From: Botryllus schlosseri
Taxonomy: Eukaryota
Direction: 5' to 3'
DNA: 64,000 nt
NCBI GenBank assembly: GCA_051294905.1
Contig: CM119373.1
Location: 35,278,001 to 35,342,000 of the forward strand
How positions within the stretch are numbered: position 1 is the stretch's first letter; each line of letters starts with the position of its first letter. The translations under genes were made by a program, and so were the position numbers. The notes under the pieces were generated by a model. It saw only the letters and a list, made by a program, of their open reading frames with translations. It did not search any database and had not been told where the DNA came from. This document shows positions 109 to 61,194 of this stretch, piece after piece.

Positions 109-2004
109 ATGGATATCGTGAACATCTTGCCAGATGAGATGTGGGTCAAGATTCTTGATTACCTCCCTCTGCACGACCGTCTTGAATGGGTAAAATTTAC
201 AAACAAAAGGCTTTTGCAGCTTGCGGGAGACGTGCCTGCAGTCCAAAATCTCGATTTTCACGGATGTAGTTATGTATCGAATGATCTGTTTCTAAAAATA
301 ATCAACCGTTCAAAGGACAGTGTGAGATTTTTATCGTTTCGGGACTGCGCTTGGCTCTCGAATCAAATCTGCACCACGATGCCCAGATTGAAAAATCTTG
401 TTACGCTGGATATATTGGGGTGTTTCTTGAGTAGCGAAACGTTGCACAGTCTACTCCACGCTACGCGCTCCATAAAAAGATTGGCTCTATCCACTACCGA
501 ACTGGTCATGAAAGATTTTTGTCGGCGGCAGTCAAAACGTGGATTGTCACTTCGGGTCTTACATGTAGAATTGCTTCACGATCCTAAAAAACTCGGCAGT
601 CGCCAAACCAGAACGGTGTTGAAGAATTTTATCAAGACATGTTGTTATTCTAAACCTCATTGCATTTCAGTCCAAACTCTCAAGCATTTGCCTCTAGGTG
701 ATTTTGAAGATATATTCATCAAGGCAAATCTTGCGGTTCATAGAGACTCCTTACAAAGAGTGATGCGGGAGGCTTGTGATAACGCTTACTACAATCAGAT
801 ACTGATTGCAGAGACTTTACATAGAGATGACAGTCCTCTGTCGGCCGGTTGCTTGGATGAAGCCCGGGTGCTCTGTCTTCCTATGCAGGGATTGAGGCAT
901 GGGAGTATGCACGCATCATGCTATTGTAAAGGAGAATACCTGCCTGATGAACTGCATGAACTGGAGTATCTTATTTGCTCTAGGAACGAATATGGTGATG
1001 GTGATGATCCAGATACTGCTGAGGCAGTTTTGCAAAATGGCAGTATTCCGAAACTGACACATCTAGACTTGGGCAGACGGTGCGCTTCTTATTTTGGTGA
1101 CACCGAGGCATTCCCGGGAGTATGCAAGAAATTACTATCTTTCACAAACCTCGTTGAGCTTAATGTGTGTGGGCTTGATTTGAATGCTAACATGCTTCTA
1201 TCAGCGATTACGGACATGAAACATTTGAAGGGTTTGTCTTTTTCGCTCCATCTTCCTATACAAACTGTCCCGGATCCAGAGCAGGATGTGATGAATTTTA
1301 CAAGTAAGACGGGAGACGCTAATGAAAGTTGCAGGTATTCAATATTTTTGTCGAAATTGGTGAAAAATTTCCCAGATTTGGAGAAGTTGGAAATAAGTTG
1401 TAGCATGGATGCCCGAAAATGTGTTGCTGTCGGTGATTTGAAACCAATTGGGACTCTGGGCAAGCTTTGTTGTCTGTCTCTACATGGATTTATTTTGGAC
1501 GATGTGGATCAGCTTGCACAAATCCTGTCTAAATGCACGAAGATATCATCATTGGACCTAAGTCACTTTGAGACTGATGTTGTCCGTGATTTTTCAGAGT
1601 GTTTTGCTTCGTTACGTCATCTCATTTATCTACGACTTGCCCATGATGACTTGGAGTCTGTCTCGAAATTCCACGATTTGCACATGAGTAGCAATCTTCA
1701 AAGATTCACTCTGTATTCAAAGTCGACATTGTCAGCAGCGTGGATCGAGTCATTTCTGGGACCGGTTGTTGCAACTTGCGATCATTTCTGTATGTGCCAT
1801 ATAGAATGTCAAAATGTGAACGTGGGTGTTAAAAAGATGATTGCAAAGTACCGGAAGCTTTGTGAGTCAAAATATCGTAACAATGTGGTATTGTCATGCA
1901 GTAATGATTGTATCAGCCAACATCCAGTGTGTCAAAGTTGGCAGGGTAGGTCGTTTTCATCTGTGGCCACATACAGCCCTTTTGACTTTCTGAAGATGCC
2001 TTGA
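109..2004 (+). CDS. FBXL18-like: F-box/LRR protein (FBXL18-like), intact paralog 1, 631 aa
   Basis: Uninterrupted ORF. N-terminal F-box (LPDEMWVKILDYLP), repeated LxxLxL units, and C-terminal HPVCQSWQGRSFSSVATYSPFDF. Segments such as FLSFRDCAWL..MPRLKNLVTLDILGCFLSS, FLSKLVKNFPDLEKLEI and LQRFTLYS...FCMCHI recall human FBXL18 (from memory). Acceptor-like ttttcAG at 70-71. Confidence 0.92.
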   Translation: MDIVNILPDEMWVKILDYLPLHDRLEWVKFTNKRLLQLAGDVPAVQNLDFHGCSYVSNDLFLKIINRSKDSVRFLSFRDCAWLSNQICTTMPRLKNLVTLDILGCFLSSETLHSLLHATRSIKRLALSTTELVMKDFCRRQSKRGLSLRVLHVELLHDPKKLGSRQTRTVLKNFIKTCCYSKPHCISVQTLKHLPLGDFEDIFIKANLAVHRDSLQRVMREACDNAYYNQILIAETLHRDDSPLSAGCLDEARVLCLPMQGLRHGSMHASCYCKGEYLPDELHELEYLICSRNEYGDGDDPDTAEAVLQNGSIPKLTHLDLGRRCASYFGDTEAFPGVCKKLLSFTNLVELNVCGLDLNANMLLSAITDMKHLKGLSFSLHLPIQTVPDPEQDVMNFTSKTGDANESCRYSIFLSKLVKNFPDLEKLEISCSMDARKCVAVGDLKPIGTLGKLCCLSLHGFILDDVDQLAQILSKCTKISSLDLSHFETDVVRDFSECFASLRHLIYLRLAHDDLESVSKFHDLHMSSNLQRFTLYSKSTLSAAWIESFLGPVVATCDHFCMCHIECQNVNVGVKKMIAKYRKLCESKYRNNVVLSCSNDCISQHPVCQSWQGRSFSSVATYSPFDFLKMP

Positions 2005-4281: not shown

Positions 4282-6147
4282 ATGGATATTGTGAGCTGCT
4301 TGCCTGATGAAATCTGGATAAAGATCCTTGATCACCTACCAGTACATGACCGTCTCGAATGGGTTAAATTTACACACAGAAGATTTTTTCATCTCGCTGG
4401 AGACATGCCTGCTGTCGAAAATCTCGATTTTCACGGGTGTAGTTATGTATCGAGCAACACGTTTCTGCGTATAATCAAGCGCTCGAGAGACAGTGTGAGA
4501 TTTTTATCTTTCCGCGATTGCGCTTGGCTTTCGGATCAAATCTGCACCACCATGCCAAGATTGAAAAATCTCGTTACTCTGGATATCATGGGATGTTTCT
4601 TGAGCAGCGAAATCTTACACAGTCTACTTCGCTCTACTCGTTCCATAAAAAAATTAGCTTTATCCACTACGGAACTGGTCATGAAAGATTTTTGTCGGTT
4701 GCAGTCAAAACGCGGACTGTCACTTCGAGTGTTACACGTAGAATTGCTTCACGATCCCGAAAAAGTCTGTAGTGACGAAACCAGAACGGTGTTGAAGAAT
4801 TTCATCAAGACATGCTGTTATTCTAAACCGCACTGCATTACAGTCCAAACGCTCAAGCATTTGCCTCTTTACGAATTTCAGGATATTCTAATAGAAGCCA
4901 ACCTTATAGTGTATCGAGACTCAATCCACAGAGTGATGAGGGAGGATTACGCTGAAACATACCAAAATCAGATGCTGTTTGCCGTTGCTTTACATCGTGA
5001 CGGCAGTGAACTGTCATCAGGTTGCTTAGATGCAGCCCGCGTGCTGTCTCTTCCTATGCAGATGAGACATAGGAATATACTTGGATCGTGTTATTGTAAA
5101 GGGAAATGCCTGCCTTTTACGCTACATGAACTGGAGTATCTCATTTGCTCAAGAGATGAATATTGTGATGACCCAGATACTGCTGAAACGGTTTTGCTTA
5201 ACTGCCGCATTCCAAAACTTACCCATCTAGACTTGGGCAGACGGTTCGATTCTTGTTTGGGGTCCTTTGACGATATATTCAAGAAATTACCGTCTTTCAC
5301 AAACCTAGTTGAACTGAATCTGTCTGGCCTGGACTTGGATGCGAACACGCTGCTGATTGCAATTGTGGGCATGAAATATTTGAAGGGTTTGTCATTCTCA
5401 CTTCACATTCCATCACAATGTGACTCAAAACAGAATGGAATGGTTTTAAGGTCAAGGGACAGAGATGCAGGTCGCATATATTCAATATTTTTGTCCAAGT
5501 TGACGACAAATTTCCCAGGTTTGGAAAAGCTGGAACTGATCTGTAGCGTGGATGCAAGAAAATACGTTACTGTCTGTGATCTGAAACCAATTGCAAAGCT
5601 CACCAAACTGCGTCATCTATCTCTACATCGATTTCCTTTGGACAATGTGGATCAGCTCGCACAGATCCTGTCCGAGAATATGAATATTTCTTCATTAGAT
5701 CTCGGTCACTTTGAGACAGATGTTGTCTGTGATTTTTCTGAGTGTTTTGCTTCGTTACGCAATCTCAATTATCTACGACTTGCCCATGATGATTTAGAGT
5801 CTGTATCGAAATTCCGCAATTTGCACATGAGTAGAAATCTTCAAAGATTCACTCTGTATTCGAATTCCACCTTGTCACCGGCGTGGATCGAGTCATTTCT
5901 GGGACCGGTTGTTGCAACCTGCAATCTGTTCTGTATGTGCCATATTGCTTGCAAAAATGTGGATGCAGATGTTAAAAGGCTAATTGCAAAATACCGGCAA
6001 ATTTGTGAATCGAAATACCGTAACAAGGTGATATTGTCATGCAGTGGTAATCGTATGACCCAACATCCAGTGTGCCAAAGTTGGCAGGGACGCGCAATCT
6101 CACAGGTCGCCACATACAGCCCTTTTGACATCGTAAAAAAACCATGA
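4282..6147 (+). CDS. FBXL18-like: F-box/LRR protein (FBXL18-like), intact paralog 2, 621 aa (alternative ATG at 4279)
   Basis: Uninterrupted ORF colinear with paralog 1. Start placed at the conserved MDIV; acceptor-like AG at 4258-4259. Confidence 0.92.
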   Translation: MDIVSCLPDEIWIKILDHLPVHDRLEWVKFTHRRFFHLAGDMPAVENLDFHGCSYVSSNTFLRIIKRSRDSVRFLSFRDCAWLSDQICTTMPRLKNLVTLDIMGCFLSSEILHSLLRSTRSIKKLALSTTELVMKDFCRLQSKRGLSLRVLHVELLHDPEKVCSDETRTVLKNFIKTCCYSKPHCITVQTLKHLPLYEFQDILIEANLIVYRDSIHRVMREDYAETYQNQMLFAVALHRDGSELSSGCLDAARVLSLPMQMRHRNILGSCYCKGKCLPFTLHELEYLICSRDEYCDDPDTAETVLLNCRIPKLTHLDLGRRFDSCLGSFDDIFKKLPSFTNLVELNLSGLDLDANTLLIAIVGMKYLKGLSFSLHIPSQCDSKQNGMVLRSRDRDAGRIYSIFLSKLTTNFPGLEKLELICSVDARKYVTVCDLKPIAKLTKLRHLSLHRFPLDNVDQLAQILSENMNISSLDLGHFETDVVCDFSECFASLRNLNYLRLAHDDLESVSKFRNLHMSRNLQRFTLYSNSTLSPAWIESFLGPVVATCNLFCMCHIACKNVDADVKRLIAKYRQICESKYRNKVILSCSGNRMTQHPVCQSWQGRAISQVATYSPFDIVKKP

Positions 6148-8467: not shown

Positions 8468-10324
8468 ATGGATATTGTTGGCGGCTTGCCCGATGAAATA
8501 TGGTTGAAGATTCTCGGTTACCTACCGGTACACGATCGTCTTGAATGGGTTAAGTTTACAAACAGAAGATTTTTACAGCTTGCTGGAGATATCACCGCTG
8601 TCCAAAATCTCGATTTTCACGGATGTAGTTATGTATCGAACGATCAGTTTTTGAAGATAATCAATCGTTCGAAGGACAGTGTGAGATTTTTATCTTTCCG
8701 GGACTGTGCTTGGTTCTCGAATCAAATTTGCACCACCATGCCGAGATTGGAAAATCTTGTTACACTGGATGTATTGGGTTGTTTCTTGAGTAGCGAAACA
8801 TTACATAGTCTACTTGGTGCCACATGCTCCTTAAAAAGACTGGCTCTATCCATTACGGAACAGGTCATGACAGATTTTTGTCTCTTGAAGTCAAAACGCA
8901 GATTGTCACTTCGAGTCTTGCATGTGGAATTGCTTCGCGATCCCAAAACTTTCTATGGTAGCATAAGCCAAACCATGACGGTGTTGAGTGATTTTATTAA
9001 TACATGCTGTCACATGCCGCACTGCGTTTCAGTCCAAACGCTGAAGTATATACCTCTTGAAGATTTTAAAAACATTATGATTGAGGCAAATCCTGCGATT
9101 GATCGTGACTCCATCCAAATGGTGACGAGGGAAGATTGTGATGAAACTTATCTAAATCGGTTACTGATTGCCGTTGCTTTACATAGGGATGTGAGTTCTC
9201 TGTCGGTTGGTTGCTTAGATGAATCGCGATTACTCTGCCTTCTTATGCAGATAAGACATGAGAACTTGCTCCCATCTGAACTACATCCGCATTTTTATTC
9301 CCCGCGGGACGAATATGTTGATGATCCAGATTCTGCTGATTTTGTTTTGTTTAATTGCTGGATCCCAAAACTGAGACATCTAAACATCGACAGATATTGT
9401 AGTTTTGATTTTGGTGTCATTGATGCATCTCCTCGTATATGCAAGAAACTACCAACTTTCACAAACCTTGTTGAGCTCAATGTATGGGGGCTGGATTTGC
9501 ATGCTAACATGCTTCTATTAGCGATTATGGATATGGAACATTTGAAGGGTTTGTCTTTTTCGCTCCATCTTCCTAAACAATGTGAGCTGGATCCAGGGCA
9601 GGATGTGTGGAATTATAAAGCTGAGACAATAGATGCCGATGAAGAAAGTTGCAGATATTCGATATTTTTGTCGAAATTGGTGAACAATTTCCCGGATTTG
9701 AAAAAGCTTGAAATGAAGTGTAGCGAACATGCCCGAAAATTCGTTTCTGTCAGTGAATTGGAACCAATCGGGATACTGGGCCAACTTCGCCATCTATCTC
9801 TACACAGATTCATTTTGGACGATGTAGATCAGCTTGTACAAATCCTATCCAAATGCATGAAAATATCATCATTGGATCTCGGTCACTTTGAGACTGATGT
9901 TGCCCATGATTTTTCAGAGTGTTTTGCTTCGTTGCGCCATCTCACTTATCTACGACTTGCCCATGATGACTTGGAGGGTGTATCGAAATTCCACGATTTG
10001 CACATGAGTAGCAATCTTCAAAGATTCACTTTTTATTCAGAGTCCACCTTGTCACCGGCGTGGATCGAGTCATTTCTGGGACCGGTTGTTGCAACTTGCG
10101 ATCTGTTCTGTATGTGCCATATCGAATGTCAATATGTGAATGCGGCTGTGAAAAAGTTGATTGCAAAGTACCGGAAGCTTTGTGAATCAAAATATCGTAA
10201 CAATGTGGTGTTGTCATGCAGTAATGAACTTGTCAGCCAACATCCAGTGTGTCAAAGTTGGCAGGCACGTTCGTTCTCTACTGTTGCCACGTGCAGCCCT
10301 TTTGACTTTGTAAAGAGACCATGA
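8468..10324 (+). CDS. FBXL18-like: F-box/LRR protein (FBXL18-like), intact chimeric paralog 3, 618 aa
   Basis: Uninterrupted ORF; acceptor AG at 8413-8414. The N-terminus matches the 55085 copy and the body matches the 59338 copy. Confidence 0.92.
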   Translation: MDIVGGLPDEIWLKILGYLPVHDRLEWVKFTNRRFLQLAGDITAVQNLDFHGCSYVSNDQFLKIINRSKDSVRFLSFRDCAWFSNQICTTMPRLENLVTLDVLGCFLSSETLHSLLGATCSLKRLALSITEQVMTDFCLLKSKRRLSLRVLHVELLRDPKTFYGSISQTMTVLSDFINTCCHMPHCVSVQTLKYIPLEDFKNIMIEANPAIDRDSIQMVTREDCDETYLNRLLIAVALHRDVSSLSVGCLDESRLLCLLMQIRHENLLPSELHPHFYSPRDEYVDDPDSADFVLFNCWIPKLRHLNIDRYCSFDFGVIDASPRICKKLPTFTNLVELNVWGLDLHANMLLLAIMDMEHLKGLSFSLHLPKQCELDPGQDVWNYKAETIDADEESCRYSIFLSKLVNNFPDLKKLEMKCSEHARKFVSVSELEPIGILGQLRHLSLHRFILDDVDQLVQILSKCMKISSLDLGHFETDVAHDFSECFASLRHLTYLRLAHDDLEGVSKFHDLHMSSNLQRFTFYSESTLSPAWIESFLGPVVATCDLFCMCHIECQYVNAAVKKLIAKYRKLCESKYRNNVVLSCSNELVSQHPVCQSWQARSFSTVATCSPFDFVKRP

Positions 10325-32345: not shown

Positions 32346-34226
32346 ATGGATATGGTGAGCAGCTTGCCAGATGAAATGTGGTTGAAGATTCTCGAAAAGC
32401 TACCACTGCACGATCGTCTTAACTGGGTCAAATTTACGAACAAACGGTTTTTTCACCTTGCTGGAGACATATCTGCAGTACAAGAACTCGATTTTCACGG
32501 ATGTAGTTATGTATCGAACGATCTGTTTTCGAAGATCATCAATTGTTCAAAAGATAGTGTGAGATTATTATCTTTCCGTGATTGCCCTTGGCTCTCAGAT
32601 GAAATCTGCACCACTATGCCAAGATTGAAAAATCTTGTTACTCTGGATATATTAGGGTGTTTCTTGAGCAGCGAAACATTACACAGTCTTCTTCGTGCCA
32701 CTCGCTCCATAAAAAAACTGGCTCTATCCACTACAGAACTGGTCATGAAAGATTTTTGTCGGTTGCAGTCAAAACGCGGATTGTCACTTCGAGTGATACA
32801 TGTAGAATTGCTTCACGATCCCGAAAAAGTCCGTAGTGACGAAACCAGAACGGTGTTCAAGAATTTTATCAAGACATGCTGTCATTCTAGACCACACTGC
32901 GTTACGGTCCAAACGCTGAAGAACTTATACTTTAATTTAAAAGATATTTTGATTGAGGCAAATCGTGCGCTTTATCGAGACTACTTTCGAACAGTGAGGA
33001 GTATAGCTTGTGATCGAACTTACGGAACTAAGATACTGACTGCTGTTGCTTTACATAGAGCTGTCAGTCCTCTGTCGGCGGATTGCTTAGATGAAGCTCG
33101 GGTACTCTGCCTTCCTATGCAGAAAAGCCGTGATAAGGTGCTCGCATCATGTTATTGTAAAGGAGAACACCTGTCTATTGCACTACATGTACTGGAGTAT
33201 CTGATTTGCTCGCGGGATGAATATATTGATGATCCAGATTCTGCTGAGGCAGTTTTGCTAAATTGCCGTATCCCGAAACTGACACATCTAAACTTATTCA
33301 CCAGTTACCGAAGTATTCCCTGCCATTTCACCGAAGTATTCCAGGGTATATGCAAGAAATTACCAGCTTTCACAAACCTTGTTGAGCTGAATGTGTGTTG
33401 GCTGGAGCTGCCTGCTAACATGCTTCTATTGGCAATCATGGACATGAAACATTTGAAGGGTTTGTCTTTTTCGCTCCATCTTCCTATACAATGTGACCCG
33501 GATCCAGAGCAGGACGTCATGAATTTTACAGCCGAGACAAGAGACACCGATGAAAGTTGCAGATATTCGATATTTTTGTTGAAATTGGTGAGAAATTTTC
33601 CGGATTTGGAAAAGTTAGAAATGATATGTAGCATGGATGCCCGAAAATCCGTTGCTGTCAGTGATTTGGAACCGATTGGTATGCTGGCCAAACTTCGTTA
33701 TCTATCTCTACACAGATTTATTTTGGACGATGTACATCAGCTTGCAAATATCCTATCCAGAAGCACAAAGATATCATCATTGGAGCTTGGTCACTTTGAG
33801 ACTGATGTTGAATGTGATTTTTCAAAGTGTTTTGCTTCATTACACGATCTCATTTATCTACGACTTGCCCATCGTGATTTACAGTCTGTATCGAAATTCC
33901 GCGATTTGCACATGAGTAGAAATCTTCAAAGATTCACTTTTCGTTCAGAGCGCGCATTGTCAGCAGCGTGGATCGAGTCATTTCTGGGACCTGTCGTTGC
34001 AACCTGTGATCTGTTTTGCATGTGCCATATCGAATGTGGAAATGGGGATGAGGAGGTGGTGAAAAGGGTCATTGCAAAATACCGGAATATTTGTGAATTG
34101 AAATACCGTAACAGGGTGATATTGTCATGTAGTGATAAACGCATCAGGCAACATCCAGTGTGCCAAAGTTGGCAGGGACGCTCGTTCTCAACTGTTGCCA
34201 CATGCAGCCCTTTTGACTTCATATAG
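32346..34226 (+). CDS. FBXL18-like: F-box/LRR protein (FBXL18-like), intact mosaic paralog, 626 aa
   Basis: Uninterrupted ORF from the conserved MDMV; acceptor AG at 32303-32304. It stops 3 codons earlier than paralogs (TAG where they have a Lys codon). Confidence 0.92.
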   Translation: MDMVSSLPDEMWLKILEKLPLHDRLNWVKFTNKRFFHLAGDISAVQELDFHGCSYVSNDLFSKIINCSKDSVRLLSFRDCPWLSDEICTTMPRLKNLVTLDILGCFLSSETLHSLLRATRSIKKLALSTTELVMKDFCRLQSKRGLSLRVIHVELLHDPEKVRSDETRTVFKNFIKTCCHSRPHCVTVQTLKNLYFNLKDILIEANRALYRDYFRTVRSIACDRTYGTKILTAVALHRAVSPLSADCLDEARVLCLPMQKSRDKVLASCYCKGEHLSIALHVLEYLICSRDEYIDDPDSAEAVLLNCRIPKLTHLNLFTSYRSIPCHFTEVFQGICKKLPAFTNLVELNVCWLELPANMLLLAIMDMKHLKGLSFSLHLPIQCDPDPEQDVMNFTAETRDTDESCRYSIFLLKLVRNFPDLEKLEMICSMDARKSVAVSDLEPIGMLAKLRYLSLHRFILDDVHQLANILSRSTKISSLELGHFETDVECDFSKCFASLHDLIYLRLAHRDLQSVSKFRDLHMSRNLQRFTFRSERALSAAWIESFLGPVVATCDLFCMCHIECGNGDEEVVKRVIAKYRNICELKYRNRVILSCSDKRIRQHPVCQSWQGRSFSTVATCSPFDFI

Positions 34227-35421
34227 ACACCATGACTGTGAATGGTGCCATAACTTGACGTCATATTTCTGTTCATAATTTTGTTTTTTTAGTTTTTATC
34301 TGAACTGCTATTTTCTTTGAAATACATATAAAAGTGATTTCATTTACCGGTACCTCTTTCAATTTATCCATCCTCGGTCATGCAGGCTGACTTCCCACCA
34401 TGTCAATTGTATGACACGGTCCATAATTTTTAAAAAGATCCAAAGTGAAGGAGGTAGTTCGATGGAAATATCTACACCTCTCCTGACATCACCAAATACG
34501 ATCCGGTGTGATCCACTTTGTGAATTTGAATTGAATTTCTGATGGTCGTGTTTAGCTCCATGCCATTAATTTATTTATTTCAGCATTAGTAGTAAAATTG
34601 AATTCTGTTGATCCTAAGGTTATGATAACTGTATACAATATCAGATATTGCGGTTGTATATATCGCTGTCTTGAGGAACGCTTCTGTAGCCTATGTATAC
34701 ATTTGGCTCTTCGTTTTTTTATTTTTATACCTAAATGTCATTTGAAGGGAGTGAGTGAGTAAGTAGGTGTCTGGATTTGGGTGAAAAGCTTCAATGTTAT
34801 AAAACATCGTTTGCCAAATGAAGCTCACATACTGGGGTAAAGCAAAGAACCATGTCCTCATTGTTGGTTTCACCTCATATAGGGTGTTAAATTGATGTTC
34901 ATGCCCCCCCCCCCTTCCCCCCGTGCATGAATAATTTTTATTTACTATGGTTAAATTGTTCAGTGTTCAATAGTATTCATTAACGCATTTAATTTCATAC
35001 CACAGTCTTGTGTTGATTTTTGCGGTTTTTTCATTTGCGTTTCTTTGTCTCACACTATTAACGCATTCGAGACCGTGTTTGTTATCAAATGCATATGGCA
35101 TAATATATTAGTATTTTCTTACTATAGCTGCAAATAAATTACTGCCATCATGTCGTATTGTATTCACACTCCTTTTGTCCGTCGCTTCAATTTTCTGATT
35201 ACAGCTCAGGATTTAGTTCGTGGGTTGCCATTATTGTGCATATAATGATTGTGTTTATTACACACTAAATCGCACAAACTTGAAAATCATCCCTTTGTTG
35301 CAATTCATACAAATGCAGAGTTATCATGTCCAATTTATTCATACTGTATCACCCTTCATTTTCAGATGATAGTTTATTAGTTTTAACTTGTTACCACTTT
35401 TTCATCTGTAAGGATTTGACA

Positions 35422-35712
35422 ATGGATATTGTGAGCAGGTTGCCTGATGAAATGTGGACAAAGATTCTCGATTATCTCCCAGTACACGACCGTCTCGAAT
35501 GGGTGAAATACACAAACAAAAGATTTTTTCAGCTTGCTGGAGATGTCTCTGCTGTCCAAAATCTCGATTTTCGTGGATGTAGTTATGTGTCCAATAGCAT
35601 GTTTCAGAAAATACTCAATTGTTCAAAAGACAGTGTGAGATTTTTATCTTTCCGGGACTGCGCTTGGCTCTCGAATGAAATTTGCGCTTTTGGAGCATTG
35701 TGCAATTTGTAG
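35422..35712 (+). pseudogene. F-box-only truncated copy (96 codons; homology ends near codon 88)
   Basis: Intact leader (AG 35364-35365) and ATG. After RDCAWLSNEIC the sequence jumps to spacer DNA (ttttggagcattgtgcaatttgtagag). Confidence 0.85.
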
Positions 35713-35836
35713 AGATCTCATCTTGAAAACGCATCTGACTGAGTCATGGAAATTTATTCTTTCCACAAATGTAATACCGCGCTATAGATTAAATAATGCA
35801 CAAATTCTCCAATATTGTGTCACTCGAACACAACGG

Positions 35837-36950
35837 CAGGGGTGGGCAATTATTTTCCTCCACGGGCCAAACAAGAAAAATAAATACATTGGCGGGCTGA
35901 GTGAAAATTTTAGCTATATTCTCTGGCGTATGTTAATTTTATTTGCAAATTACATTGTTAATAAATGCGGCTCAGTGAATGTGTTGATATATTAGGTAAT
36001 GAGAAAGTGACAGTTCAAAATAGCTATTTGCTGTCATGATTCAAAACAATGTTGAACATGATACATTTTAGCTCCATGTTCCTCTATTAAGAATCTAAAA
36101 CAGTGGTTCTCAAAATTGTTTAGGCACACCTCCCTTAACGATAGCGAACAATTTGGCGCCCCCTTGTTATGATATCACAAAATATTAAAAAGTGCAACCA
36201 ACGGATAGTTTGATGGCATGAACGATTCTAGCTTTTGATGAGAGAATTGTGATATATCAATGTCGGACAATACACAGAGCAACAACTATAAGCTGGCTGT
36301 GTATCGCGCATAGCTTCGCCCTCCCTTGACCGAGTGTTTCGTGTTTTTGTCATAAGACTGACTTTAATTAAAATCCTTGATCTCGACGACATGCTCGGCA
36401 AAAACCGAAAGTACAGGTTTACCCCCGACTCCAGTATACGAATATTTAGTTCTCTAAATTCTTAGCCTAAACCTTTTTTGAATTTCAATTTTCGGCATGG
36501 CATCCTTTATGGGTAGTAGATATGATGACTCGTATAGTAATCGCAAGCACTGATTGACTTGTTTTACGAATTGGGATTTGGAAACATATCACGTAACAAA
36601 TTGGAACACATGCCATATAATGCGTAATGTGACAATGGCAACCAATAAGGTTTGCACTAAACTATATGGAAAGAGTGATTTTTGTGATTTCAATTGATTC
36701 TTATACTTTGCCACATTGCCTTTATTTTAAATCTGGATTACGCATGTCAGATACGTAGGCAGCGCAATCGTGGTATATTAATGAACAGGCTTCAAAGTAA
36801 ACGACTTTCCTGTTCATTTGATACAGCCTATGGCTTTAGTCATTCAAAATGCAAGTTTATTGTTTTGAATTCCAAGCAACACTTCACGGTCCGCACAAAT
36901 TGGCTTCGCGGGCCGCATTTGGCCCGCGGGCCGCACTTTGCCCAGCTCTG
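35837..36950. mobile_element. hAT (Buster/Charlie-like) non-autonomous element, with an internal second hAT left end at 36101
   Basis: TIRs CAGGGGTGGGCAA / TTGCCCAGCTCTG, GGGCCGCA subterminal repeats, flanks cacaacgg/gtcaacgg (last 6 nt identical), and internal CAGTGGTTCTCAA at 36101. Confidence 0.78.
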
Positions 36951-37389
36951 GTCAACGGGTTTCTGTATCTTCATTTGGTAAATTTGTACCAGCTCTTGTG
37001 TAATCTTTATGAGCTATTGAATCATTGCATCTCCTCAAAGCTGGGGTCGTAGCTGATATTTCTGTAAGGGTATGTTAATTATTTAGCTGCTAACTGCTAT
37101 TGGTATTATTTTTACTTCCATTGTAATATTCCAAATTCATAACCTAGATTACGGTACCGATTTTCACCTTGAGCAAAGGCGCAAGGCTGGGCACAAGGAT
37201 TTGAATACTTGAATCTGAATCCAGTAATAATACGGATGCAATCTAGTCGGGGTAGCAAGAGATGATGTTATTTCGAGTACTGAAATTCCACTATCCCTGC
37301 TATAATGTATTATTTTAGCAATGAATGTAAAGTTGATAGTAATTTCTAATGCTGAATGTTTGAAATCTCAATTATTTGTGTCACAGCAG

Positions 37390-37551
37390 TGTAATGTACT
37401 AACTTAAGACTTTATTCATGCGAACATAACAGAAGGTCCTGACGTGCAGGGCAACAGAAAACGAATGACTATCGTCGTTTACTCGACACAGTACAACACA
37501 ATTCAGTAATTGTAATCAAGTAATAATAATGTCCAATCACGATACACATCA
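37390..37551 (-). repeat. 3' LTR of the Gypsy element
   Basis: Identical to 41855-42016. Preceded on the minus strand by purine tract GAAAGAGGGGAGA (37552-37564). Confidence 0.96.
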
Positions 37552-37584
37552 TCTCCCCTCTTTCATCCGAAGCGTACTGTACAT

Positions 37585-41802: not shown

Positions 41803-41836
41803 CTATGATAATTTGTGTGGCCTTTCTTTTAAATAG

Positions 41837-41854
41837 ATCCTGCCGACAACGCCA
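41837..41854 (-). other. Primer-binding site, probably tRNA-Ser
   Basis: Minus-strand TGGCGTTGTCGGCAGGAT abuts the 5' LTR. The plus-strand ATCCTGCCGACAACGCCA matches the recalled 3' end of metazoan tRNA-Ser (ATCCTGCCGACTACG-CCA) at 17/18. Confidence 0.8.
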
Positions 41855-42016
41855 TGTAATGTACTAACTTAAGACTTTATTCATGCGAACATAACAGAAG
41901 GTCCTGACGTGCAGGGCAACAGAAAACGAATGACTATCGTCGTTTACTCGACACAGTACAACACAATTCAGTAATTGTAATCAAGTAATAATAATGTCCA
42001 ATCACGATACACATCA
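41855..42016 (-). repeat. 5' LTR of the Gypsy element
   Basis: Identical to 37390-37551, followed by TSD AGCAG. Confidence 0.96.
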
Positions 42017-42469
42017 AGCAGCATACCAAACGTTTAACATGTATTAGAAAGGTATAAAATGCCTTCATGTGGTGTCTAATTAGTATTACGGTACTGAACC
42101 GTATATACTTTACGATAGCATGAGAGGTTCATATTTAAACTTTCCACATCTTTCGTACTGCTGTAACGTCACAATGAATGAAGCTAGATTACTCGACTCA
42201 AACCCTAGTACTCGATTCACTCAAGTATTCGATTCTGGCTAGCCTTAGTACGAAATCAAGATGATTCTAAAAATGTATTAATCCAAAACACGTTTAGTTT
42301 TATAAATTGGGTTTTTGAATGTCTATGCTCATGAATTTGTACATGTTGATTTGGAGCATAGCTTTGGATTTCATGTTTATACTGCAAACCATCCAACTAG
42401 CCTTCTCTAAAAATCGGACCTCGTTTTTCTAATTCAAATTAGCGGTGCTCGATGTATCATTTCAATTGT

Positions 42470-42488
42470 ACCACCCTTCTATTTTCAG
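42470..42488 (+). promoter_or_regulatory. Representative conserved 3' splice acceptor (ACCCTTCTATTTTCAG) upstream of essentially every paralog
   Basis: Pyrimidine tract plus YAG found 15-56 nt before the ATG at 71, 4259, 8414, 11632, 16308, 21439, 32304, 35365, 42488, 45754, 55031 and 59293. Confidence 0.7.
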
Positions 42489-42532
42489 ATGATAGTGTCG
42501 AGTTGAAGCTTTTCATTTGACATGATTCAATA

Positions 42533-44425
42533 ATGGATATTGTGAGCAGCTTGCCAGATGAAATGTGGTTGAAGATTCTCGAATACCTTCCATTGCATGA
42601 CCGTTTTGAATGGGTCAAATTTACAAACAAAAGGTTTTTTCACCTTGCGGGAGACATATCTGCAGTCAAAGATCTCGATTTTCACGGATGTAGTTATCTT
42701 TCGAACGATCAGTTTTTGAAAATAATCAATCGTTCAAAGGACAGTGTGAGGTTTTTGTCCGTCCGGGACTGCGCTTGGTTCTCGGCTCAAATCTGCACCA
42801 CCATGCCGAGATTGAAAAATCTTGTTACACTGGATATATTGGGGTGTTTCTTGAGTAGTGAAACATTACACACTATACTTGGTGCCACATGCTCCCTAAA
42901 GAGATTGGCTCTATCCACTACGGAACTGGTCATGACAGATTTTTGTCTCTTGCAGTCAAAACGCGGAATGTCACTTCGAGTCTTGCATGTGGAATTGCTT
43001 CACGATCCCGAAACTTTCTATAGTAGCGAAAGCGAAACCATAACGGTGTTGAGTGATTTTATTAATACATGCTGTCATTCAAAACCGCACTGCGTTTCAG
43101 TCCAAACGTGGAAGTATTTATCTCGCAACGATTTTGAAAATATTATGATTGCGGCAAGTCCTGCGATTGATCGAGACTCCATCCAAACAGTGACGAGGGA
43201 AGCTTGTGATGAAACTTATCTAAATCGGATACTGATTGCCGTTGCTTTACATAGGGATGTGAGTTCTCTGTCGGTTGGTTGCTTAGATGAATCGCGGGTA
43301 CTCTGCCTTCCTATGCAGATGAGACATATGAATTTGCTCGCATCATGTTATTGTAAAGAAGAATACCTTCCTATTGCGCTACATGAGCTGGAGTATATTT
43401 TGTCTCGGGACGAAGATACTGATGATCCAGATTATGCTGAGGCAGATTTGTTAAACTCCCGGACCCCAAAACTGAGACATCTAAACTTGGGCAGACGACC
43501 TACTTGTTATTATGGTGTCGCCGAAGCATTCCCTCGTATATGCAAGAAATTACCAACTTTTACAAACCTTGTTGAGCTTAATGTGTGTGGACTGGATTTG
43601 CATGCTAACATGCTTCTATTAGCGATTATGGATATGAAACATTTGATTGGTTTGTCTTTTTCGCTCCATCTTCCTGTACAATGTGAGCCGGATCCAGAGC
43701 AGGACGTAATTAATTTTACAGCTGAGACGAGAGACGCCGATGAAAGTTGCAGATATTCGATATTTTTGTCGAAATTGGTGAAAAATTTCCCGGATTTGGA
43801 AAAGTTTGAAATGAAGTGTAGCATGGATGCCCGAAAATACGTTGCTGTCAGTGATTTGGAACCGGTTGGGATGCTGGGCAAACTTCACCGACTATCTCTA
43901 CACTGGTTTATTTTGGACGATGTAGATGGGCTTGCAAAGATCCTATCCAAATGCACAAAGATATCATCATTGGACCTTGGTCACTTTGAGACTGATGTTG
44001 CCTGTGATTTTTCAGAGTGTTTTGCTTCGTTACGCCATCTTATTTATCTACGACTCGCCCATGATGACTTGGAAGGTGTATCGAAATTTAACGATTTGCA
44101 CATGAGTAGCAATCTTCGAAGATTCACTTTTTATTCAGAGTGCGAATTGTCAGCAGCGTGGATCGGGTCGTTTCTGGGACCGGTCTTTGCAACCTGCGAT
44201 CTGTTTTGTATGTGCCATATCGAATGTGAAAATGGGGATACCGCGGTTGTGAAAAATGTCATTGCAACATACCGGGCTATTTTTGCATTGAAATACGGTA
44301 ACAGGGTGATATTGTCATGTAGTGATAATCGTATCAGCCAACATCCAGTGTGTCAAAGTTGGCAGGGACGCTCGTTCTCAACTGTTGCCACATGCAGCCC
44401 TTTTGACTTTGCAAAGACACCATGA
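42533..44425 (+). CDS. FBXL18-like: F-box/LRR protein (FBXL18-like), intact paralog, 630 aa
   Basis: Uninterrupted ORF; acceptor AG at 42487-42488. Confidence 0.92.
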   Translation: MDIVSSLPDEMWLKILEYLPLHDRFEWVKFTNKRFFHLAGDISAVKDLDFHGCSYLSNDQFLKIINRSKDSVRFLSVRDCAWFSAQICTTMPRLKNLVTLDILGCFLSSETLHTILGATCSLKRLALSTTELVMTDFCLLQSKRGMSLRVLHVELLHDPETFYSSESETITVLSDFINTCCHSKPHCVSVQTWKYLSRNDFENIMIAASPAIDRDSIQTVTREACDETYLNRILIAVALHRDVSSLSVGCLDESRVLCLPMQMRHMNLLASCYCKEEYLPIALHELEYILSRDEDTDDPDYAEADLLNSRTPKLRHLNLGRRPTCYYGVAEAFPRICKKLPTFTNLVELNVCGLDLHANMLLLAIMDMKHLIGLSFSLHLPVQCEPDPEQDVINFTAETRDADESCRYSIFLSKLVKNFPDLEKFEMKCSMDARKYVAVSDLEPVGMLGKLHRLSLHWFILDDVDGLAKILSKCTKISSLDLGHFETDVACDFSECFASLRHLIYLRLAHDDLEGVSKFNDLHMSSNLRRFTFYSECELSAAWIGSFLGPVFATCDLFCMCHIECENGDTAVVKNVIATYRAIFALKYGNRVILSCSDNRISQHPVCQSWQGRSFSTVATCSPFDFAKTP

Positions 44426-45261: not shown

Positions 45262-45542
45262 AGGCTGCAGCGTGCATCCAGTCATTTCTGGGACCTGTCG
45301 TTGCAACCTGCCATCTGTTATGTATGGGACCTATCGAATGTGAAAAGATTTTCGCGAATGTGAGAAAGGTCATGGCAAAATACCGGAATATTTGCAAAAC
45401 GAAGTATCGTAGCAGTGTGGTGTTGTCGTGGAAGGTGCAATGATTATCATCTCAGCCAATATCCAGTATGTCAATGTTGGCAATGAAGGTCATTTACAAC
45501 TGTGGCCATATACTAACCTTTTGACTTCTAAATATGCCTCGG
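45262..45542 (+). pseudogene. Collapsed leader + C-terminus relic (second copy)
   Basis: Same junction (ttcatcaggctgcagcgt) as 11156; acceptor AG at 45219-45220. Confidence 0.85.
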
Positions 45543-55084: not shown

Positions 55085-56944
55085 ATGGATATCGTGGGCG
55101 GCTTGCCCGATGAAATCTGGCTGAAGATTCTCGGTTACCTACCAGTACATGATCGTCTTGAATGGGTTAAGTTTACAAACAGAAGATTTTGTCAGCTTGC
55201 TGGAGATATAACCGCAGTCCAAAATCTCGATTTTCACGGATGTAGTTATGTATCGAACGATCAGTTTTTGAAAATAATCAATCGTTCAAAGGATAGTGTG
55301 AGATTTTTATCTTTCCGGGACTGTGCTTGGCTCTCGAATCAAATCTGCACCACCATGCCTAGATTGAAAAATCTTGTTACGCTGGATATATTGGGGTGTT
55401 TCTTGAACAGCGAAACATTACACAGTCTTCTTCGTGCCACTCGCTCCATAAAAAAGTTGGGTATATCCACTACAGAACTCGTCATGAAAGATTTTTGTCA
55501 GTTGCAGTCAAAACGCGGATTGTCACTTCGAGTCTTACATGTAGAATTGCTTCACGATCCAGAAAAAGTCAGCAGTCGCCAAACCAGAACGGTGTTAAGG
55601 AATTTTATCAAGACATGCTGTCATTCTAAACCACACTGCATTACAGTCCAAACTCTCAAGCATTTGCCTCTAGATGATTTCGACGATATATTCATTGAGG
55701 CAAATCTTGCGGTCTATCGAGACTCCGTCCAAAGAGTGATGAGGGAAACTTATGATCGAGCATACCAAAATCAGATGCTGATTGCAGTGGCTTTTCATCG
55801 AGTAGACAGTGCTCTGTCGAAAGGTTGCTTAGATATGGCTAAGGTACTTTGTCTTCCAATGCTGTTGAGACATGAGAGAAAATATGTATCCTGTTACTGT
55901 AAAGGACGTCCCCTCCCTAACACACTGCATGAACTCGAGTATCTTATTTGCTCCCGTAATGAATATTGGGGTGATCCAGATTCAGCTGAGGATCTTTTGC
56001 TGAACCACAGTCTTCCGAATCTCACACATCTAGACTTGGGCCACCGGCTCTGTTCTTATGTTGATATCTCCGAGGGTATATGCACGAGATTACCATTTTT
56101 CACAAACCTTGTTGAGCTGAATGTGTATGGGGTAAGCATGGATGCTAACGTCCTTTTGAATTCGATTATGGGCATGAAACATTTGAATGGTTTGTCTTTT
56201 TCACTACATATTCCTTTGCAATGTGATCCAGAACAGAACGTGACTGAGACAAGAGAAACAGATGCAAGTGGCAGATACTCAATGTTTTTGTTGAAATTGG
56301 TGAATAATTTACCAGGCTTAGAAAAGTTGGAACTGCTCTGTAGCGTAGATGCCAGAAAATGTTTTGCTGTCTGTGATCTAAAACCAATAGTTGAGCTGGC
56401 AAAACTTCGTTATCTATCTCTACATAGATTTCCTCTGGACAATGTAGATCAGCTCGCAAAGATCCTATCCAGCAACAAGAATATATCATCATTGGATCTT
56501 GGTCACTTTGAAACAGATGTTGTCTGTGATTTTTCAGAGTGTTTTGCTTCGCTACGCAATCTCATTTATCTACGACTTGCCCATAATGATTTGGAGTCTG
56601 TCTCAAAATTCAAAGATTTGCAAATGAGTAGAAATCTTCAAAGATTCACTCTTCATTCAAAGTCCTCCTTGTCAGCAGCGTATATCGAGTCATTCTTGGG
56701 ACCATTCGTTGCAACCTGCGATTTGTTTTGTATGGCACATATCCAATGTCAAAATGTGGATGAAGATGTGAAAAAGATGATTGAAAAGTACCGCAATATT
56801 TGTGAATCGAAATATCGTAACAACGTGGTATTGTCATGCAGCGATGATCGTATCAGCCAACATCCAGTCTGTCAAAGCTGGCAGGGAAGGTCGTTTTCAT
56901 CTGTTGCCACATACAGCCCTTTTGACTTCCTAAAGATGCCTTGA
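55085..56944 (+). CDS. FBXL18-like: F-box/LRR protein (FBXL18-like), intact paralog, 619 aa
   Basis: Uninterrupted ORF from MDIV; acceptor AG at 55030-55031. Confidence 0.92.
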   Translation: MDIVGGLPDEIWLKILGYLPVHDRLEWVKFTNRRFCQLAGDITAVQNLDFHGCSYVSNDQFLKIINRSKDSVRFLSFRDCAWLSNQICTTMPRLKNLVTLDILGCFLNSETLHSLLRATRSIKKLGISTTELVMKDFCQLQSKRGLSLRVLHVELLHDPEKVSSRQTRTVLRNFIKTCCHSKPHCITVQTLKHLPLDDFDDIFIEANLAVYRDSVQRVMRETYDRAYQNQMLIAVAFHRVDSALSKGCLDMAKVLCLPMLLRHERKYVSCYCKGRPLPNTLHELEYLICSRNEYWGDPDSAEDLLLNHSLPNLTHLDLGHRLCSYVDISEGICTRLPFFTNLVELNVYGVSMDANVLLNSIMGMKHLNGLSFSLHIPLQCDPEQNVTETRETDASGRYSMFLLKLVNNLPGLEKLELLCSVDARKCFAVCDLKPIVELAKLRYLSLHRFPLDNVDQLAKILSSNKNISSLDLGHFETDVVCDFSECFASLRNLIYLRLAHNDLESVSKFKDLQMSRNLQRFTLHSKSSLSAAYIESFLGPFVATCDLFCMAHIQCQNVDEDVKKMIEKYRNICESKYRNNVVLSCSDDRISQHPVCQSWQGRSFSSVATYSPFDFLKMP

Positions 56945-59337: not shown

Positions 59338-61194
59338 ATGGATATTGTGAGCAGCTTGCCAGATGAAATGTGGTTGAAGATTCTCGAATACCTTCCACTG
59401 CATGACCGTTTTGAATGGGTCAAATTTACGAGCAAAAGGTTTTTTCACCTTGCTTGGGACATATCTGCAGTCCAAGATCTCGATTTTCACGGATGTAGTT
59501 ATGTATCGAGCGATCAGTTTTTGAAAATAATCAATCGTTCGAGGGACAGTGTGAGATTTTTGTCCTTTCGGGACTGTACTTGGTTGTCGAATCAAATCTG
59601 CACCACCGTGCCGAGATTGGAAAATCTTGTTACATTGGATATATTGGGGTGTTTCTTGAGTAGCGAAACATTACATGGTCTACTTGGTGCCGCATGCTCC
59701 TTAAAGAGATTGGCTCTATCCACTACGGAACTGGTCATGACAGATTTTTGTCGGTTGCAGTCAAAACGCAGATTGTCACTTCGAGTCTTGCATGTGGAAT
59801 TGCTTCACGATCCCGAAACTCTCTATGGTAGCGTAAACCAAACCATAACGGTGTTGAGTGATTTTATTAATACATGCTGTCACATGCCGCACTGCGTTTC
59901 AGTCCAAACGCCGAAGAATATACTTCTCGATGATTTTAAAAACATTATGATTGAGGCAAATCCTGCGATTGATCGTGACTCCATCCAAAGGGTGACGAGG
60001 GTAGCTTGTGATCATACTTATCTAAATCGGTTACTGATTGCCGTTGCTTTACATAGGGATGTGAGTTCTCTGTCGGTTGGTTGCTTAGATGAATCGCGAT
60101 TACTCTGCCTTCCTATGCAGATAAGACATGAGAACTTGCTCGCATCTGAACTACATACGCATTTTTTTTCCCCGCGGGACGAATATGTTGATGATCCAGA
60201 TTCTGCTGAGGCAGTTTTGTTAAATTGCTGGATCCCAAAACTGAGACATCTAAACATCGACAGATCTTGTAGTTTTGATTTTGGTGTCATTGATGCATCT
60301 CCTCGTATTTGCAAGAAACTACCAACTTTCACAAACCTTGTTGAGCTCAATGTATGTGGGCTGGATTTGCATGCTAACATGCTTCTATTAGCTATTATGG
60401 ATATGGAACATTTGAAGGGTTTGTCTTTTTCGCTCCATCTTCCTAAACAATGTGAGCTGGATCCAGAGCAGGATGTGTGGAATTATAAAACTGAGACAAT
60501 AGACGCCGATGAAGAAAGTTGCAGATATTCGATATTTTTGTCGAAATTGGTGAACAATTTCCCGGATTTGAAAAAGCTTGAAATGAAGTGTAGCGAACAT
60601 GCCCGAAAATTCGTTTCTGTCAGTGAATTGGAACCGATTGGGATGCTGGGCCAACTTCGCCATCTATCTCTACACAGCTTCATTTTGGACGATGTAGATC
60701 AGGTTGCACAAATCCTATCCAAATGCATGAAAATATCATCATTGGATCTTGGTCACTTTGAGACCGATGTTGCCCATGATTTTTCAGAGTGTTTTGCTTC
60801 GTTACGCCATCTCACTAATCTACGACTTGCCCATGATGACTTGGAGGGTGTATCGAAATTCCACGATTTGCACATGAGTAGCAATCTTCAAAGATTAACT
60901 TTTTATTCAGGGTCCACCTTGTCACCGGCGTGGATCGAGTCATTTCTGGGACCGGTTATTGCAACTTGCGATCTGTTCTGTATGTGCCATATCGAATGTG
61001 AAAATGTGAATGCGGCTGTGAAAAAGTTGATTGCAAAGTACCGGAAGCTTTGTGAATCAAAATATCGTAACAATGTGGTGTTGTCATGGAGTCATAATCG
61101 TGTCAGCGAACATCCAGTGTGTCAAAGTTGGCAGGCACGTTCGTACTCTACTGTTGCCACGTGCAGCCCTTTTGACTTCGTAAAGAGACCATGA
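59338..61194 (+). CDS. FBXL18-like: F-box/LRR protein (FBXL18-like), intact paralog, 618 aa
   Basis: Uninterrupted ORF; acceptor AG at 59292-59293. Confidence 0.92.
   Translation: MDIVSSLPDEMWLKILEYLPLHDRFEWVKFTSKRFFHLAWDISAVQDLDFHGCSYVSSDQFLKIINRSRDSVRFLSFRDCTWLSNQICTTVPRLENLVTLDILGCFLSSETLHGLLGAACSLKRLALSTTELVMTDFCRLQSKRRLSLRVLHVELLHDPETLYGSVNQTITVLSDFINTCCHMPHCVSVQTPKNILLDDFKNIMIEANPAIDRDSIQRVTRVACDHTYLNRLLIAVALHRDVSSLSVGCLDESRLLCLPMQIRHENLLASELHTHFFSPRDEYVDDPDSAEAVLLNCWIPKLRHLNIDRSCSFDFGVIDASPRICKKLPTFTNLVELNVCGLDLHANMLLLAIMDMEHLKGLSFSLHLPKQCELDPEQDVWNYKTETIDADEESCRYSIFLSKLVNNFPDLKKLEMKCSEHARKFVSVSELEPIGMLGQLRHLSLHSFILDDVDQVAQILSKCMKISSLDLGHFETDVAHDFSECFASLRHLTNLRLAHDDLEGVSKFHDLHMSSNLQRLTFYSGSTLSPAWIESFLGPVIATCDLFCMCHIECENVNAAVKKLIAKYRKLCESKYRNNVVLSWSHNRVSEHPVCQSWQARSYSTVATCSPFDFVKRP

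What the first reader, a model, noticed from the sequence alone, without database searches (positions are those of the whole stretch)
580..1130. Hypervariable patches with in-frame indels between conserved LRR scaffold blocks
Immediately after ELLxDP the paralogs read KKLGSRQ, EKVCSDE, KTFYGSISQ, ETFYRFDSS, EAVFIDSDDY, ETFYSSESE, EKVSSRQ and ETLYGSVNQ. After HL(D/N)L they read GRRCASYFGDTEA, GRRFDSCLGSFDD, GRWRRYSGVTK, GNWRPPYFGIITE, FTSYRSIPCHFTE, GRRPTCYYGVAEA and GHRLCSYVDISE. The segments after VQT and EYLICS vary similarly. Length changes in intact copies preserve frame, including loss of the CYCKG..LHELEYLIC block in the 8468 and 59338 copies. The F-box and C-terminal ~200 aa stay conserved. 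Inference: diversifying selection on the substrate-binding surface.
Basis: partly seen in the sequence, partly recalled or inferred. Interest (0 to 1): 0.72.

Follow-up and report, generated by a model that had tools for sequence, protein, structure and literature searches.

The report
Variable loops in F-box gene array
A cluster of about 19 intact, single-exon genes for FBXL18-like ubiquitin-ligase adaptors keeps its F-box and repeat scaffold constant. A few loops in the middle repeats change at about the neutral rate and only a small subset of codons changes faster, a pattern already known from worm and plant F-box families.

Summary
Non-synonymous change is strongly clustered and synonymous change is not. 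73 of 98 gap columns fall in those same stretches.

The gene at 109-2004 is one of 7 intact copies in the window. The whole array holds 19 intact copies over about 162 kb, all on one strand. Each encodes an F-box followed by about 18 leucine-rich repeats (LRRs) and is closest to FBXL18.

The variable patches are the strand-to-helix loops and irregular inserts of LRRs 5-11. They are not the concave beta-sheet face, which is the most conserved part (dN/dS 0.24).

Region-wise dN/dS:
- Loop after ELLHDP: 0.92.
- Stretch after VQT: 0.70.
- CYCKG/EYLICS stretch: 0.82.
- Loop after HLDL: 1.23, the only one above 1, and only marginally.

Site models that allow for the evident recombination find about 6% of codons at omega about 1.8. 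The M8-M8a statistic is 14.4, against a maximum of 4.3 in 12 null simulations. That signal disappears when the patches are removed.

The diversifying-selection reading is therefore partly supported: mostly relaxed constraint, with a modest adaptive component. No expression was seen. The scan had already noted this same array on the adjoining, overlapping window (s1-236783).

The parts
109..2004 (+). Intact single-exon ORF (631 aa) of the FBXL18-like F-box/LRR gene that holds the finding.
   Evidence: ORF list. Pfam LRR_FBXL18 31.1 bits against a cut-off of 27, and F-box 18.2 bits. Best fold match is human FBXL18, TM 0.56. Nearest ESM Atlas clusters are FBXL18, score 0.97.
109..243 (+). F-box (aa 1-45, three helices), conserved among paralogs.
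   Evidence: dN/dS 0.20. Helices 9-18, 21-27 and 29-38. Predicted contact with this genome's Skp1: score 0.73, best control 0.01.
244..576 (+). LRRs 1-5 (aa 46-156), conserved scaffold.
   Evidence: dN/dS 0.23. Strands and helices in the model have pLDDT 70-88.
577..618 (+). Patch A: the loop after the LRR5 strand VLHVELL-HDP (aa 157-170), variable, with 2- and 4-codon indels.
   Evidence: Omega 0.92 (0.70-1.16); 1.16 pooled over all pairs and 0.71 in independent pairs. Site R165 has P=0.89.
679..867 (+). Patch after VQT: a 63-residue irregular insert after the LRR6 strand (aa 191-253). It looks like degenerate repeats with a conserved hydrophobic skeleton.
   Evidence: Omega 0.70, significantly below 1. 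pLDDT is under 50 over 204-248. Sites L191 (P=0.95) and G197 (P=0.84).
886..1017 (+). Patch C: the CYCKG..LHELEYLICS stretch and the following loop (aa 260-303). It holds the 10+2, 14 and 45-codon in-frame deletions seen in other copies.
   Evidence: Omega 0.82. Indel list. Sites G265 (P=0.93), M267 and G298.
1069..1110 (+). Patch B: the loop after the LRR9 strand HLD (aa 321-334, GRRCASYFGDTEA). It is the only stretch with dN above dS.
   Evidence: Omega 1.23 (1.05-1.49). Loop-wise NG86 value 1.50, with 4 sites at P>0.8. Sites C325, A326, D331 and T332.
1249..1311 (+). Patch D: the loop after the LRR11 strand GLSFSL (aa 381-401), variable and indel-bearing.
   Evidence: Omega 0.73. pLDDT is under 50 over 384-404. 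Sites M395 and S399.
1312..2001 (+). LRRs 11-18 and the C-terminal tail (aa 402-631). Conserved within the array but variable among the distant paralogs.
   Evidence: dN/dS 0.35. Entropy 0.35-0.8 in near copies against 1.2-2.2 in far copies. Isolated candidate sites S430 and H522.
4282..6147 (+). Intact paralog (621 aa).
8468..10324 (+). Intact paralog (618 aa) that lacks the CYCKG..LHELEY block.
32346..34226 (+). Paralog (626 aa) that ends 4 to 5 codons early at a stop; otherwise intact.
42533..44425 (+). Intact paralog (630 aa). A near-identical copy lies 44.8 kb downstream, outside the window.
55085..56944 (+). Intact paralog (619 aa).
59338..61194 (+). Intact paralog (618 aa) that lacks the CYCKG..LHELEY block.

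Best explanation
The finding lies in one gene of a roughly 162-kb, same-strand tandem array of FBXL18-like F-box/LRR genes. These are probably substrate receptors of SCF (Skp1-Cullin-F-box) ubiquitin ligases. Each protein has an N-terminal F-box that docks on Skp1, followed by a solenoid of about 18 LRRs. Purifying selection holds three parts constant: the F-box, the beta strands of the concave face, and the C-terminal repeats. The loops that leave the beta strands of the central repeats (LRRs 5-11), and two irregular inserts there, are weakly constrained. They accept amino-acid changes at about the neutral rate, and they accept in-frame indels. A small subset of codons, about 6% and half of them inside these loops, appears to be under positive selection. 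The clearest case is the 14-residue loop after HLDL in LRR9. All strand-to-helix loops of an LRR solenoid lie on the same rim, so these patches could together form a variable recognition surface beside a conserved concave face. This would resemble the rim loops that build the ligand pocket in the plant F-box receptors TIR1 and COI1. Unequal crossing-over and gene conversion within the array shuffle the segments and create or destroy copies. What is shown here: the array, the fold class, the conservation pattern, the recombination and the dN/dS values. What is inferred: SCF function, the loops acting as the substrate-contacting surface, and any adaptive driver.
For: - Array: 7 intact copies in the window and 19 in the array, plus many broken ones, all on the + strand.
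- Family: Pfam PF19729 above its cut-off, though it covers only 65 residues. The best fold hit is human FBXL18 (E 4.7e-13, TM 0.56); the solved-structure hits include TIR1, COI1 and D3 among other LRR proteins, NLRC4 ranking first. The nearest ESM Atlas clusters are FBXL18.
- Skp1 docking: score 0.73, best of 3 controls 0.01. The runs agree in at least 82% of contacts and the partner's pLDDT is at least 81. That mark was reached by 51 of 78 solved complexes and 2 of 108 mismatched pairs.
- Selection overall: global omega is 0.40-0.46.
- Selection by structural class: beta strands 0.24, helices 0.36, helix-to-strand loops 0.32, strand-to-helix loops 0.57, irregular inserts 0.61.
- Clustering: non-synonymous change is clustered and synonymous change is not.
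- Region omegas run from 0.70 to 1.23.
- Site models: M8-M8a is 14.4 with 4 segment trees and 11.8 with 8 trees. The null maximum was 4.3 in 12 simulations. The statistic is 9.4 without gap columns, 8.5 without the three short copies, and 3.3 without the patches.
- Recombination: segment trees conflict at nodes with 100% bootstrap support, and separate trees gain about 600 lnL units.
Against: - No expression was seen. Four RNA runs gave only 7 partly fitting reads on the gene and its flanks, and there was no positive control.
- The positive-selection signal is modest. M2a-M1a is only 7.1-7.5 once recombination is allowed for. No region except LRR9's loop exceeds omega 1. Only two sites reach naive posterior 0.95, and one of them (H522) is outside the patches.
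- The simulated null was somewhat inflated over the chi-square expectation: 3 of 12 simulations reached 2.7 or more.
- The patches are the low-confidence parts of the model (pLDDT under 50). No coordinates were available, so their position on a common rim rests on LRR topology and was not measured.
- The Skp1 pass may only reflect likeness to the many solved F-box/Skp1 complexes.
- The substrates are unknown.
Confidence: 0.68

Rival explanations
1. Relaxed constraint only. The patches are loops and degenerate repeats that matter little for function. They drift neutrally and tolerate indels. The small omega>1 class is an artefact of unmodelled gene conversion, tree error or alignment uncertainty near gaps.
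For: Four of the five variable stretches have omega at or below 1, and three of them are significantly below 1. The independent-pair test for the HLDL loop is not significant (P=0.14). M2a-M1a drops from 23.8 to 7.5 when segment trees replace a single tree. The null LRTs are inflated. The patches coincide with the low-pLDDT stretches.
Against: M8-M8a of 14.4 is more than three times the largest of 12 null values, and those nulls were simulated with a finer recombination mosaic than was analysed. The signal survives removal of gap-adjacent columns (9.4) and the use of eight trees (11.8). Synonymous divergence in the patches is not raised, so they are not misaligned or older.
Confidence: 0.27
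2. A decaying family. The array is a birth-and-death cluster that is no longer used, and the 'intact' ORFs are young duplicates that have not yet been hit by disabling mutations.
For: At least 8 broken copies or fragments sit beside 7 intact copies in the window alone. No RNA support was found. Several intact copies carry 45-codon deletions.
Against: Scaffold omega of 0.2-0.35 over synonymous distances of about 0.4 among 19 copies shows long-standing purifying selection on the F-box, the strands and the C-terminal repeats. Pseudogenes would give omega near 1 throughout.
Confidence: 0.05

Closest known systems
Vertebrate FBXL18 (F-box/LRR-repeat protein 18; Pfam PF19729 LRR_FBXL18)
   Same: An N-terminal F-box followed by one long LRR solenoid of similar length. 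It is the best fold match (TM 0.56/0.51 over residues 7-627), the nearest language-model clusters are FBXL18, and the Pfam hit is above its cut-off.
   Different: Identity in the fold alignment is only about 14%. The Pfam match covers 65 of 591 model positions. Here the gene is a single coding exon in a tandem array of 19 or more copies with variable central loops. Orthology was not tested.
[quoted passage not shown] 2021, PMC8120010)
   Same: Tandem-duplicated F-box adaptor genes, a conserved F-box, variation concentrated in the putative substrate-binding part, many pseudogenes, and a proposed role in recognising fast-changing targets.
   Different: The recognition domain here is an FBXL18-type LRR solenoid, not FTH or FBA. 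The selection signal here is weak (about 6% of codons at omega about 1.8). It sits in loops, while the concave face stays conserved.
Plant hormone receptors TIR1/COI1/D3(MAX2): F-box proteins with an 18-LRR horseshoe
   Same: These are among the closest solved folds. From general knowledge of those structures, long loops leaving the strands on the top rim of particular LRRs build the ligand and degron pocket. This is the same topological position as the variable patches here.
   Different: TM scores are only 0.35-0.47 and there is no sequence similarity. No evidence was found for a small-molecule pocket. The equivalence of the loops was inferred from topology and not from superposed coordinates.

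Membership tests
F-box proteins (SCF substrate receptors) | An F-box motif of about 45 residues forming three helices near the N-terminus. | tested here: met
   An LPDE..W..IL..LP..DR...V pattern is present. Pfam F-box scores 18.2 bits (E 0.0024), just under the 20.5 cut-off. The model has three helices at 9-38. The fold alignment to FBXL18 starts at residue 7.
F-box proteins (SCF substrate receptors) | Binds Skp1 through the F-box. | tested here: inconclusive
   Prediction only. The score is 0.73 against a best control of 0.01, with the interface on residues 2-36 and the Skp1 C-terminal helices. The pass may come from likeness to solved complexes. No binding experiment was done.
FBXL18 family (Pfam PF19729) | A match to the LRR_FBXL18 profile above the gathering score. 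| tested here: met
   31.1 bits against 27, but over residues 66-130 only (model positions 6-70 of 591).
FBXL18 family (Pfam PF19729) | Full-length fold likeness to FBXL18. | tested here: met
   Foldseek E 4.7e-13, TM 0.56 by query, rank 1 of Swiss-Prot models. The ESM Atlas FBXL18 clusters score 0.97 with 178-180 of 256 shared features.
FBXL18 family (Pfam PF19729) | Orthology to vertebrate FBXL18 (tree position, synteny). | not tested
   No named FBXL18 sequences could be brought in by reference. Only three unnamed homologs of about 30% identity exist in 1.8 billion representative proteins.
Adaptively evolving F-box adaptor expansions (Thomas 2006 type) | Tandem lineage-specific expansion with a conserved F-box. 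| tested here: met
Adaptively evolving F-box adaptor expansions (Thomas 2006 type) | dN/dS above 1 at sites of the substrate-recognition domain. | tested here: inconclusive
   M8-M8a is 11.8-14.4, above a simulated null maximum of 4.3. But M2a-M1a is only 7.1-7.5, region omegas are 0.70-1.23, and few sites have a high posterior.

The most novel reading that the evidence does not exclude
The array may be a germline-encoded recognition repertoire. Each copy would present a different combination of rim loops beside a shared concave face, so that the set of SCF adaptors collectively targets a changing set of proteins for degradation. Candidates are viral or parasite proteins. Alternatively, by analogy with the S-locus F-box arrays of plants, the targets could be non-self variants of a polymorphic partner in an animal. 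Recombination within the array would generate new loop combinations.
Probability: 0.12. Interest if true: 0.75.

Novelty: new member of a known kind. Interest (0 to 1): 0.36.

Why it matters
Expanded F-box adaptor families with fast-changing recognition domains are thought to act in innate defence or conflict, but their targets are almost all unknown. This array gives a compact natural series of 19 related receptors with the same scaffold and different loops. The LRR9 loop is an obvious first place to test for specificity. It also shows that, in this LRR family, the classic concave face is the conserved part and the rim loops are the variable part. As it stands the finding extends a known pattern to an FBXL18-like family. 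It does not reveal a new mechanism.

Tried and rejected
- Expression: four RNA runs were laid on the gene with 1.5-kb flanks. They gave 0, 4, 3 and 0 reads, all only partly fitting, and there was no positive control, so neither expression nor silence is shown. No public run holds more than 31% of the gene's sampled words.
- Homolog searches: the 5.8-billion word-indexed search found one real relative. The exhaustive 1.8-billion search found three full-length relatives at about 30% identity plus generic LRR hits. None carries a name.
- Solved structures by sequence: only weak F-box-region hits, KDM2A and FBXL17.
- Single-tree site models: M2a-M1a of 23.8 was rejected as the headline figure because the segment trees conflict.
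- Gene conversion homogenising the scaffold as the cause of the contrast: rejected, because synonymous divergence is not clustered and is not higher in the patches.
- Misalignment as the cause of high dN in the patches: rejected, because pS there is 0.24-0.38, far from saturation, and the signal survives dropping gap-adjacent columns.
- Concave-face diversification: rejected.
- Three-dimensional mapping of sites: not possible, because the structure tool returns no coordinates. Only secondary structure and LRR topology were used.
- PAML and HyPhy are not installed. Branch lengths came from nucleotide trees and were scaled per segment. Posteriors are naive empirical Bayes.
- A literature search for FBXL18-family expansions found nothing specific.

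Full report
WHAT IS THERE

The stretch 580-1130 lies inside a 631-codon open reading frame at 109-2004 (+). A tblastn search of that protein against the window finds 13 full or partial copies, all on the + strand and spaced about 4 kb apart. Seven copies are intact: 109, 4282, 8468, 42533, 55085 and 59338, plus 32346, which ends four to five codons early. The others are frameshifted, stopped or fragmentary.

In the whole genome (495 Mb, 219 contigs) the array runs for about 162 kb on contig C3. It holds 19 ORFs of 574-631 codons. Relatives at 28-31% identity sit on at least seven other contigs.

The window also holds a Ty3/gypsy-type element at 37390-42016.

WHAT THE PROTEIN IS

- Pfam gives LRR_FBXL18 above its cut-off (31.1 against 27 bits, on residues 66-130 only). 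It gives a near-threshold F-box.
- An AlphaFold2 model built on 29 paralogs and homologs has mean pLDDT 70 and pTM 0.75. It shows a three-helix F-box and about 18 strand-helix repeats.
- Its best match among Swiss-Prot models is human FBXL18 (E 4.7e-13, TM 0.56, residues 7-627). The solved-structure hits include the plant F-box receptors TIR1, COI1 and D3, alongside NLRC4, which ranks first, and TLRs.
- The ESM Atlas nearest clusters are FBXL18 of chordates.
- This genome has a single-exon Skp1 gene. A complex prediction of residues 1-120 with it scored 0.73, against 0.01 for the best of three controls. The runs agreed in at least 82% of contacts and the partner's pLDDT was at least 81. That mark was reached by 51 of 78 solved complexes and 2 of 108 mismatched pairs. 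Because F-box/Skp1 complexes are well known, this shows likeness and not proof of binding.
- Public protein sets hold only three full-length relatives, at about 30% identity and unnamed.

CHECKING THE OBSERVATION

Two in each set come from broken copies.
- The alignments of 7 and of 19 intact copies show the described alternation of conserved and variable stretches. They also show the loss of the CYCKG..LHELEY block in the 8468 and 59338 copies.
- Non-synonymous difference is far more clustered than in any of 5000 column shuffles. Synonymous difference is not clustered (P=0.30). The contrast is therefore not a mutation-rate or gene-conversion effect.
- 73 of 98 gap-bearing columns lie in the same variable classes.
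- That indels in intact copies preserve frame is true by construction.

WHERE THE PATCHES SIT

I used the model's secondary structure to class residues as strand, strand-to-helix loop, helix, helix-to-strand loop or irregular insert.

| Class | dN/dS |
|---|---|
| Beta strands | 0.24 |
| Helix-to-strand loops | 0.32 |
| Helices | 0.36 |
| Strand-to-helix loops | 0.57 |
| Irregular inserts | 0.61 |

The beta strands are the most conserved class. This includes their outward-facing H, E, D, R, S, N and K residues, many of which are invariant.

The variable stretches all begin right after a strand of LRRs 5-11: after VLHVELL (LRR5), CISVQT (LRR6), VLCLPM (LRR7), YLICSR (LRR8), HLD (LRR9) and GLSFSL (LRR11). 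They coincide with the segments of pLDDT below 50.

By the topology of LRR solenoids, all strand-to-helix loops lie on one rim, so the patches may form one surface. I could not measure this because no coordinates are returned. The concave face, the classic LRR binding surface, is not the variable part.

SELECTION

- Global omega is 0.40-0.46.
- Pooled Nei-Gojobori values by region are 0.20 (F-box), 0.23 (LRRs 1-5), 1.16 (patch A), 0.62 (VQT patch), 0.71 (patch C), 1.28 (patch B), 0.50 (patch D) and 0.35 (C-terminal part).
- In eight phylogenetically independent pairs only patch B exceeds 1 (1.54; 58 non-synonymous against 12 synonymous differences; P=0.14).
- Maximum-likelihood region omegas, with the synonymous rate tied to the flanks, are 0.92, 0.70, 0.82, 1.23 and 0.73.
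- Segment trees conflict at fully supported nodes. For example, the 59338 copy groups with one gene in codons 1-155 and with another clade afterwards. Separate trees gain about 600 log-likelihood units. Recombination is therefore real and single-tree tests are unsafe.

Site-model likelihood-ratio statistics (2 x delta lnL):

| Trees used | M2a-M1a | M8-M7 | M8-M8a |
|---|---|---|---|
| Single tree | 23.8 | not run | not run |
| Four segment trees | 7.5 | 25.8 | 14.4 |
| Eight segment trees | 7.1 | not run | 11.8 |

With four segment trees, M8 puts omega at 1.83 for 6% of codons.

I simulated twelve data sets under M8a with the eight-segment mosaic and analysed them exactly as the real data. 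They gave M8-M8a values of 0 to 4.3. This null is somewhat inflated, but it lies far below the observed value.

Candidate sites with naive posterior of 0.9 or more are L191, G265, A326, D331, T332, S430 and H522. Thirteen of the 26 sites above 0.5 fall in the patches, which are 22% of the columns (P=0.0013).

READING

- The patches are mostly weakly constrained loops and degenerate repeats evolving near neutrality.
- A modest positive-selection component is concentrated in them, most clearly in the LRR9 loop.
- Its structural premise, a variable binding face between scaffold blocks, needs restating as variable rim loops beside a conserved concave face.
- The overall pattern (tandem F-box adaptor expansion, conserved F-box, variable recognition part, many dead copies) is the one described for nematode and plant F-box families (PMC8120010, which cites Thomas 2006). 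A search for reports of FBXL18-family expansions found none.

EXPRESSION

Four RNA runs of the same species label gave only seven partly fitting reads over the gene and its flanks. There was no positive control. This neither shows nor excludes expression.

EARLIER NOTES

A follow-up on the adjoining, overlapping window (s1-236783) reached a similar reading: an FBXL18-like array, middle loops changing at about the neutral rate, and no expression seen. It guessed a sea squirt as the host. I did not test the organism. My analysis adds the small omega>1 class and its location. Other readers' notes of chimeric copies and of crossovers near codons 75-95 fit the recombination seen here and the dip in synonymous divergence at codons 81-95.

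Noticed in passing
window 37390-42016: A Ty3/gypsy-type LTR element with two 162-nt LTRs that are 100% identical (37390-37551 and 41855-42016) and an uninterrupted 1405-codon ORF on the - strand (zinc knuckle, RT, RNase H, integrase). The gene spacing 32346-to-42533 is 4633 bp longer here than between the matching genes of the duplicated block downstream. The insertion therefore looks younger than that block duplication. Observed only.
   Followed up: partly
window 32346-47404, against G000:C3:35359739-35370172 and 35407397-35414617: The array has grown recently by duplication of multi-gene blocks of about 45-49 kb. The 42533 copy and the copy 44.8 kb downstream are nearly identical (tree branch lengths 0.006 and 0.0007), and a third related copy lies at +134.7 kb.
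   Followed up: partly
window about 40-70, and the same place before every copy (alignment A3): A conserved pyrimidine tract ending in TTTTCAG lies 30-70 nt upstream of each ATG. It looks like a 3' splice acceptor, so the single coding exon probably follows a 5' UTR intron or a trans-splice site.
   Followed up: no
codons 81-95 (window 349-393) and 489-513 (window 1573-1647) of the 109 gene: Synonymous difference among paralogs dips to 0.14-0.16, against 0.32 on average. This could be a gene-conversion hot spot or nucleotide-level constraint. Another reader noted lesions and crossovers at codons 75-95.
   Followed up: no
G000:C3:23.30-23.44 Mb, C1:9.38-9.43 Mb, C6:8.09 Mb, C15:17.31-17.32 Mb, C8, C10, C16, C169: Further single-exon F-box/LRR genes sit at 28-31% identity, several again in local clusters. 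In these distant copies the C-terminal third is variable, whereas it is conserved inside this array.
   Followed up: partly
L040:1165-1656 (G000:C6:24319764-24320255): A single-exon, full-length Skp1 gene (163 aa). It is the only Skp1-domain match in the genome search.
   Followed up: partly
window 109-2004: No public run of the same species label holds more than 31% of this gene's sampled 31-mers. This suggests high allelic divergence or presence/absence variation of array members between individuals.
   Followed up: no
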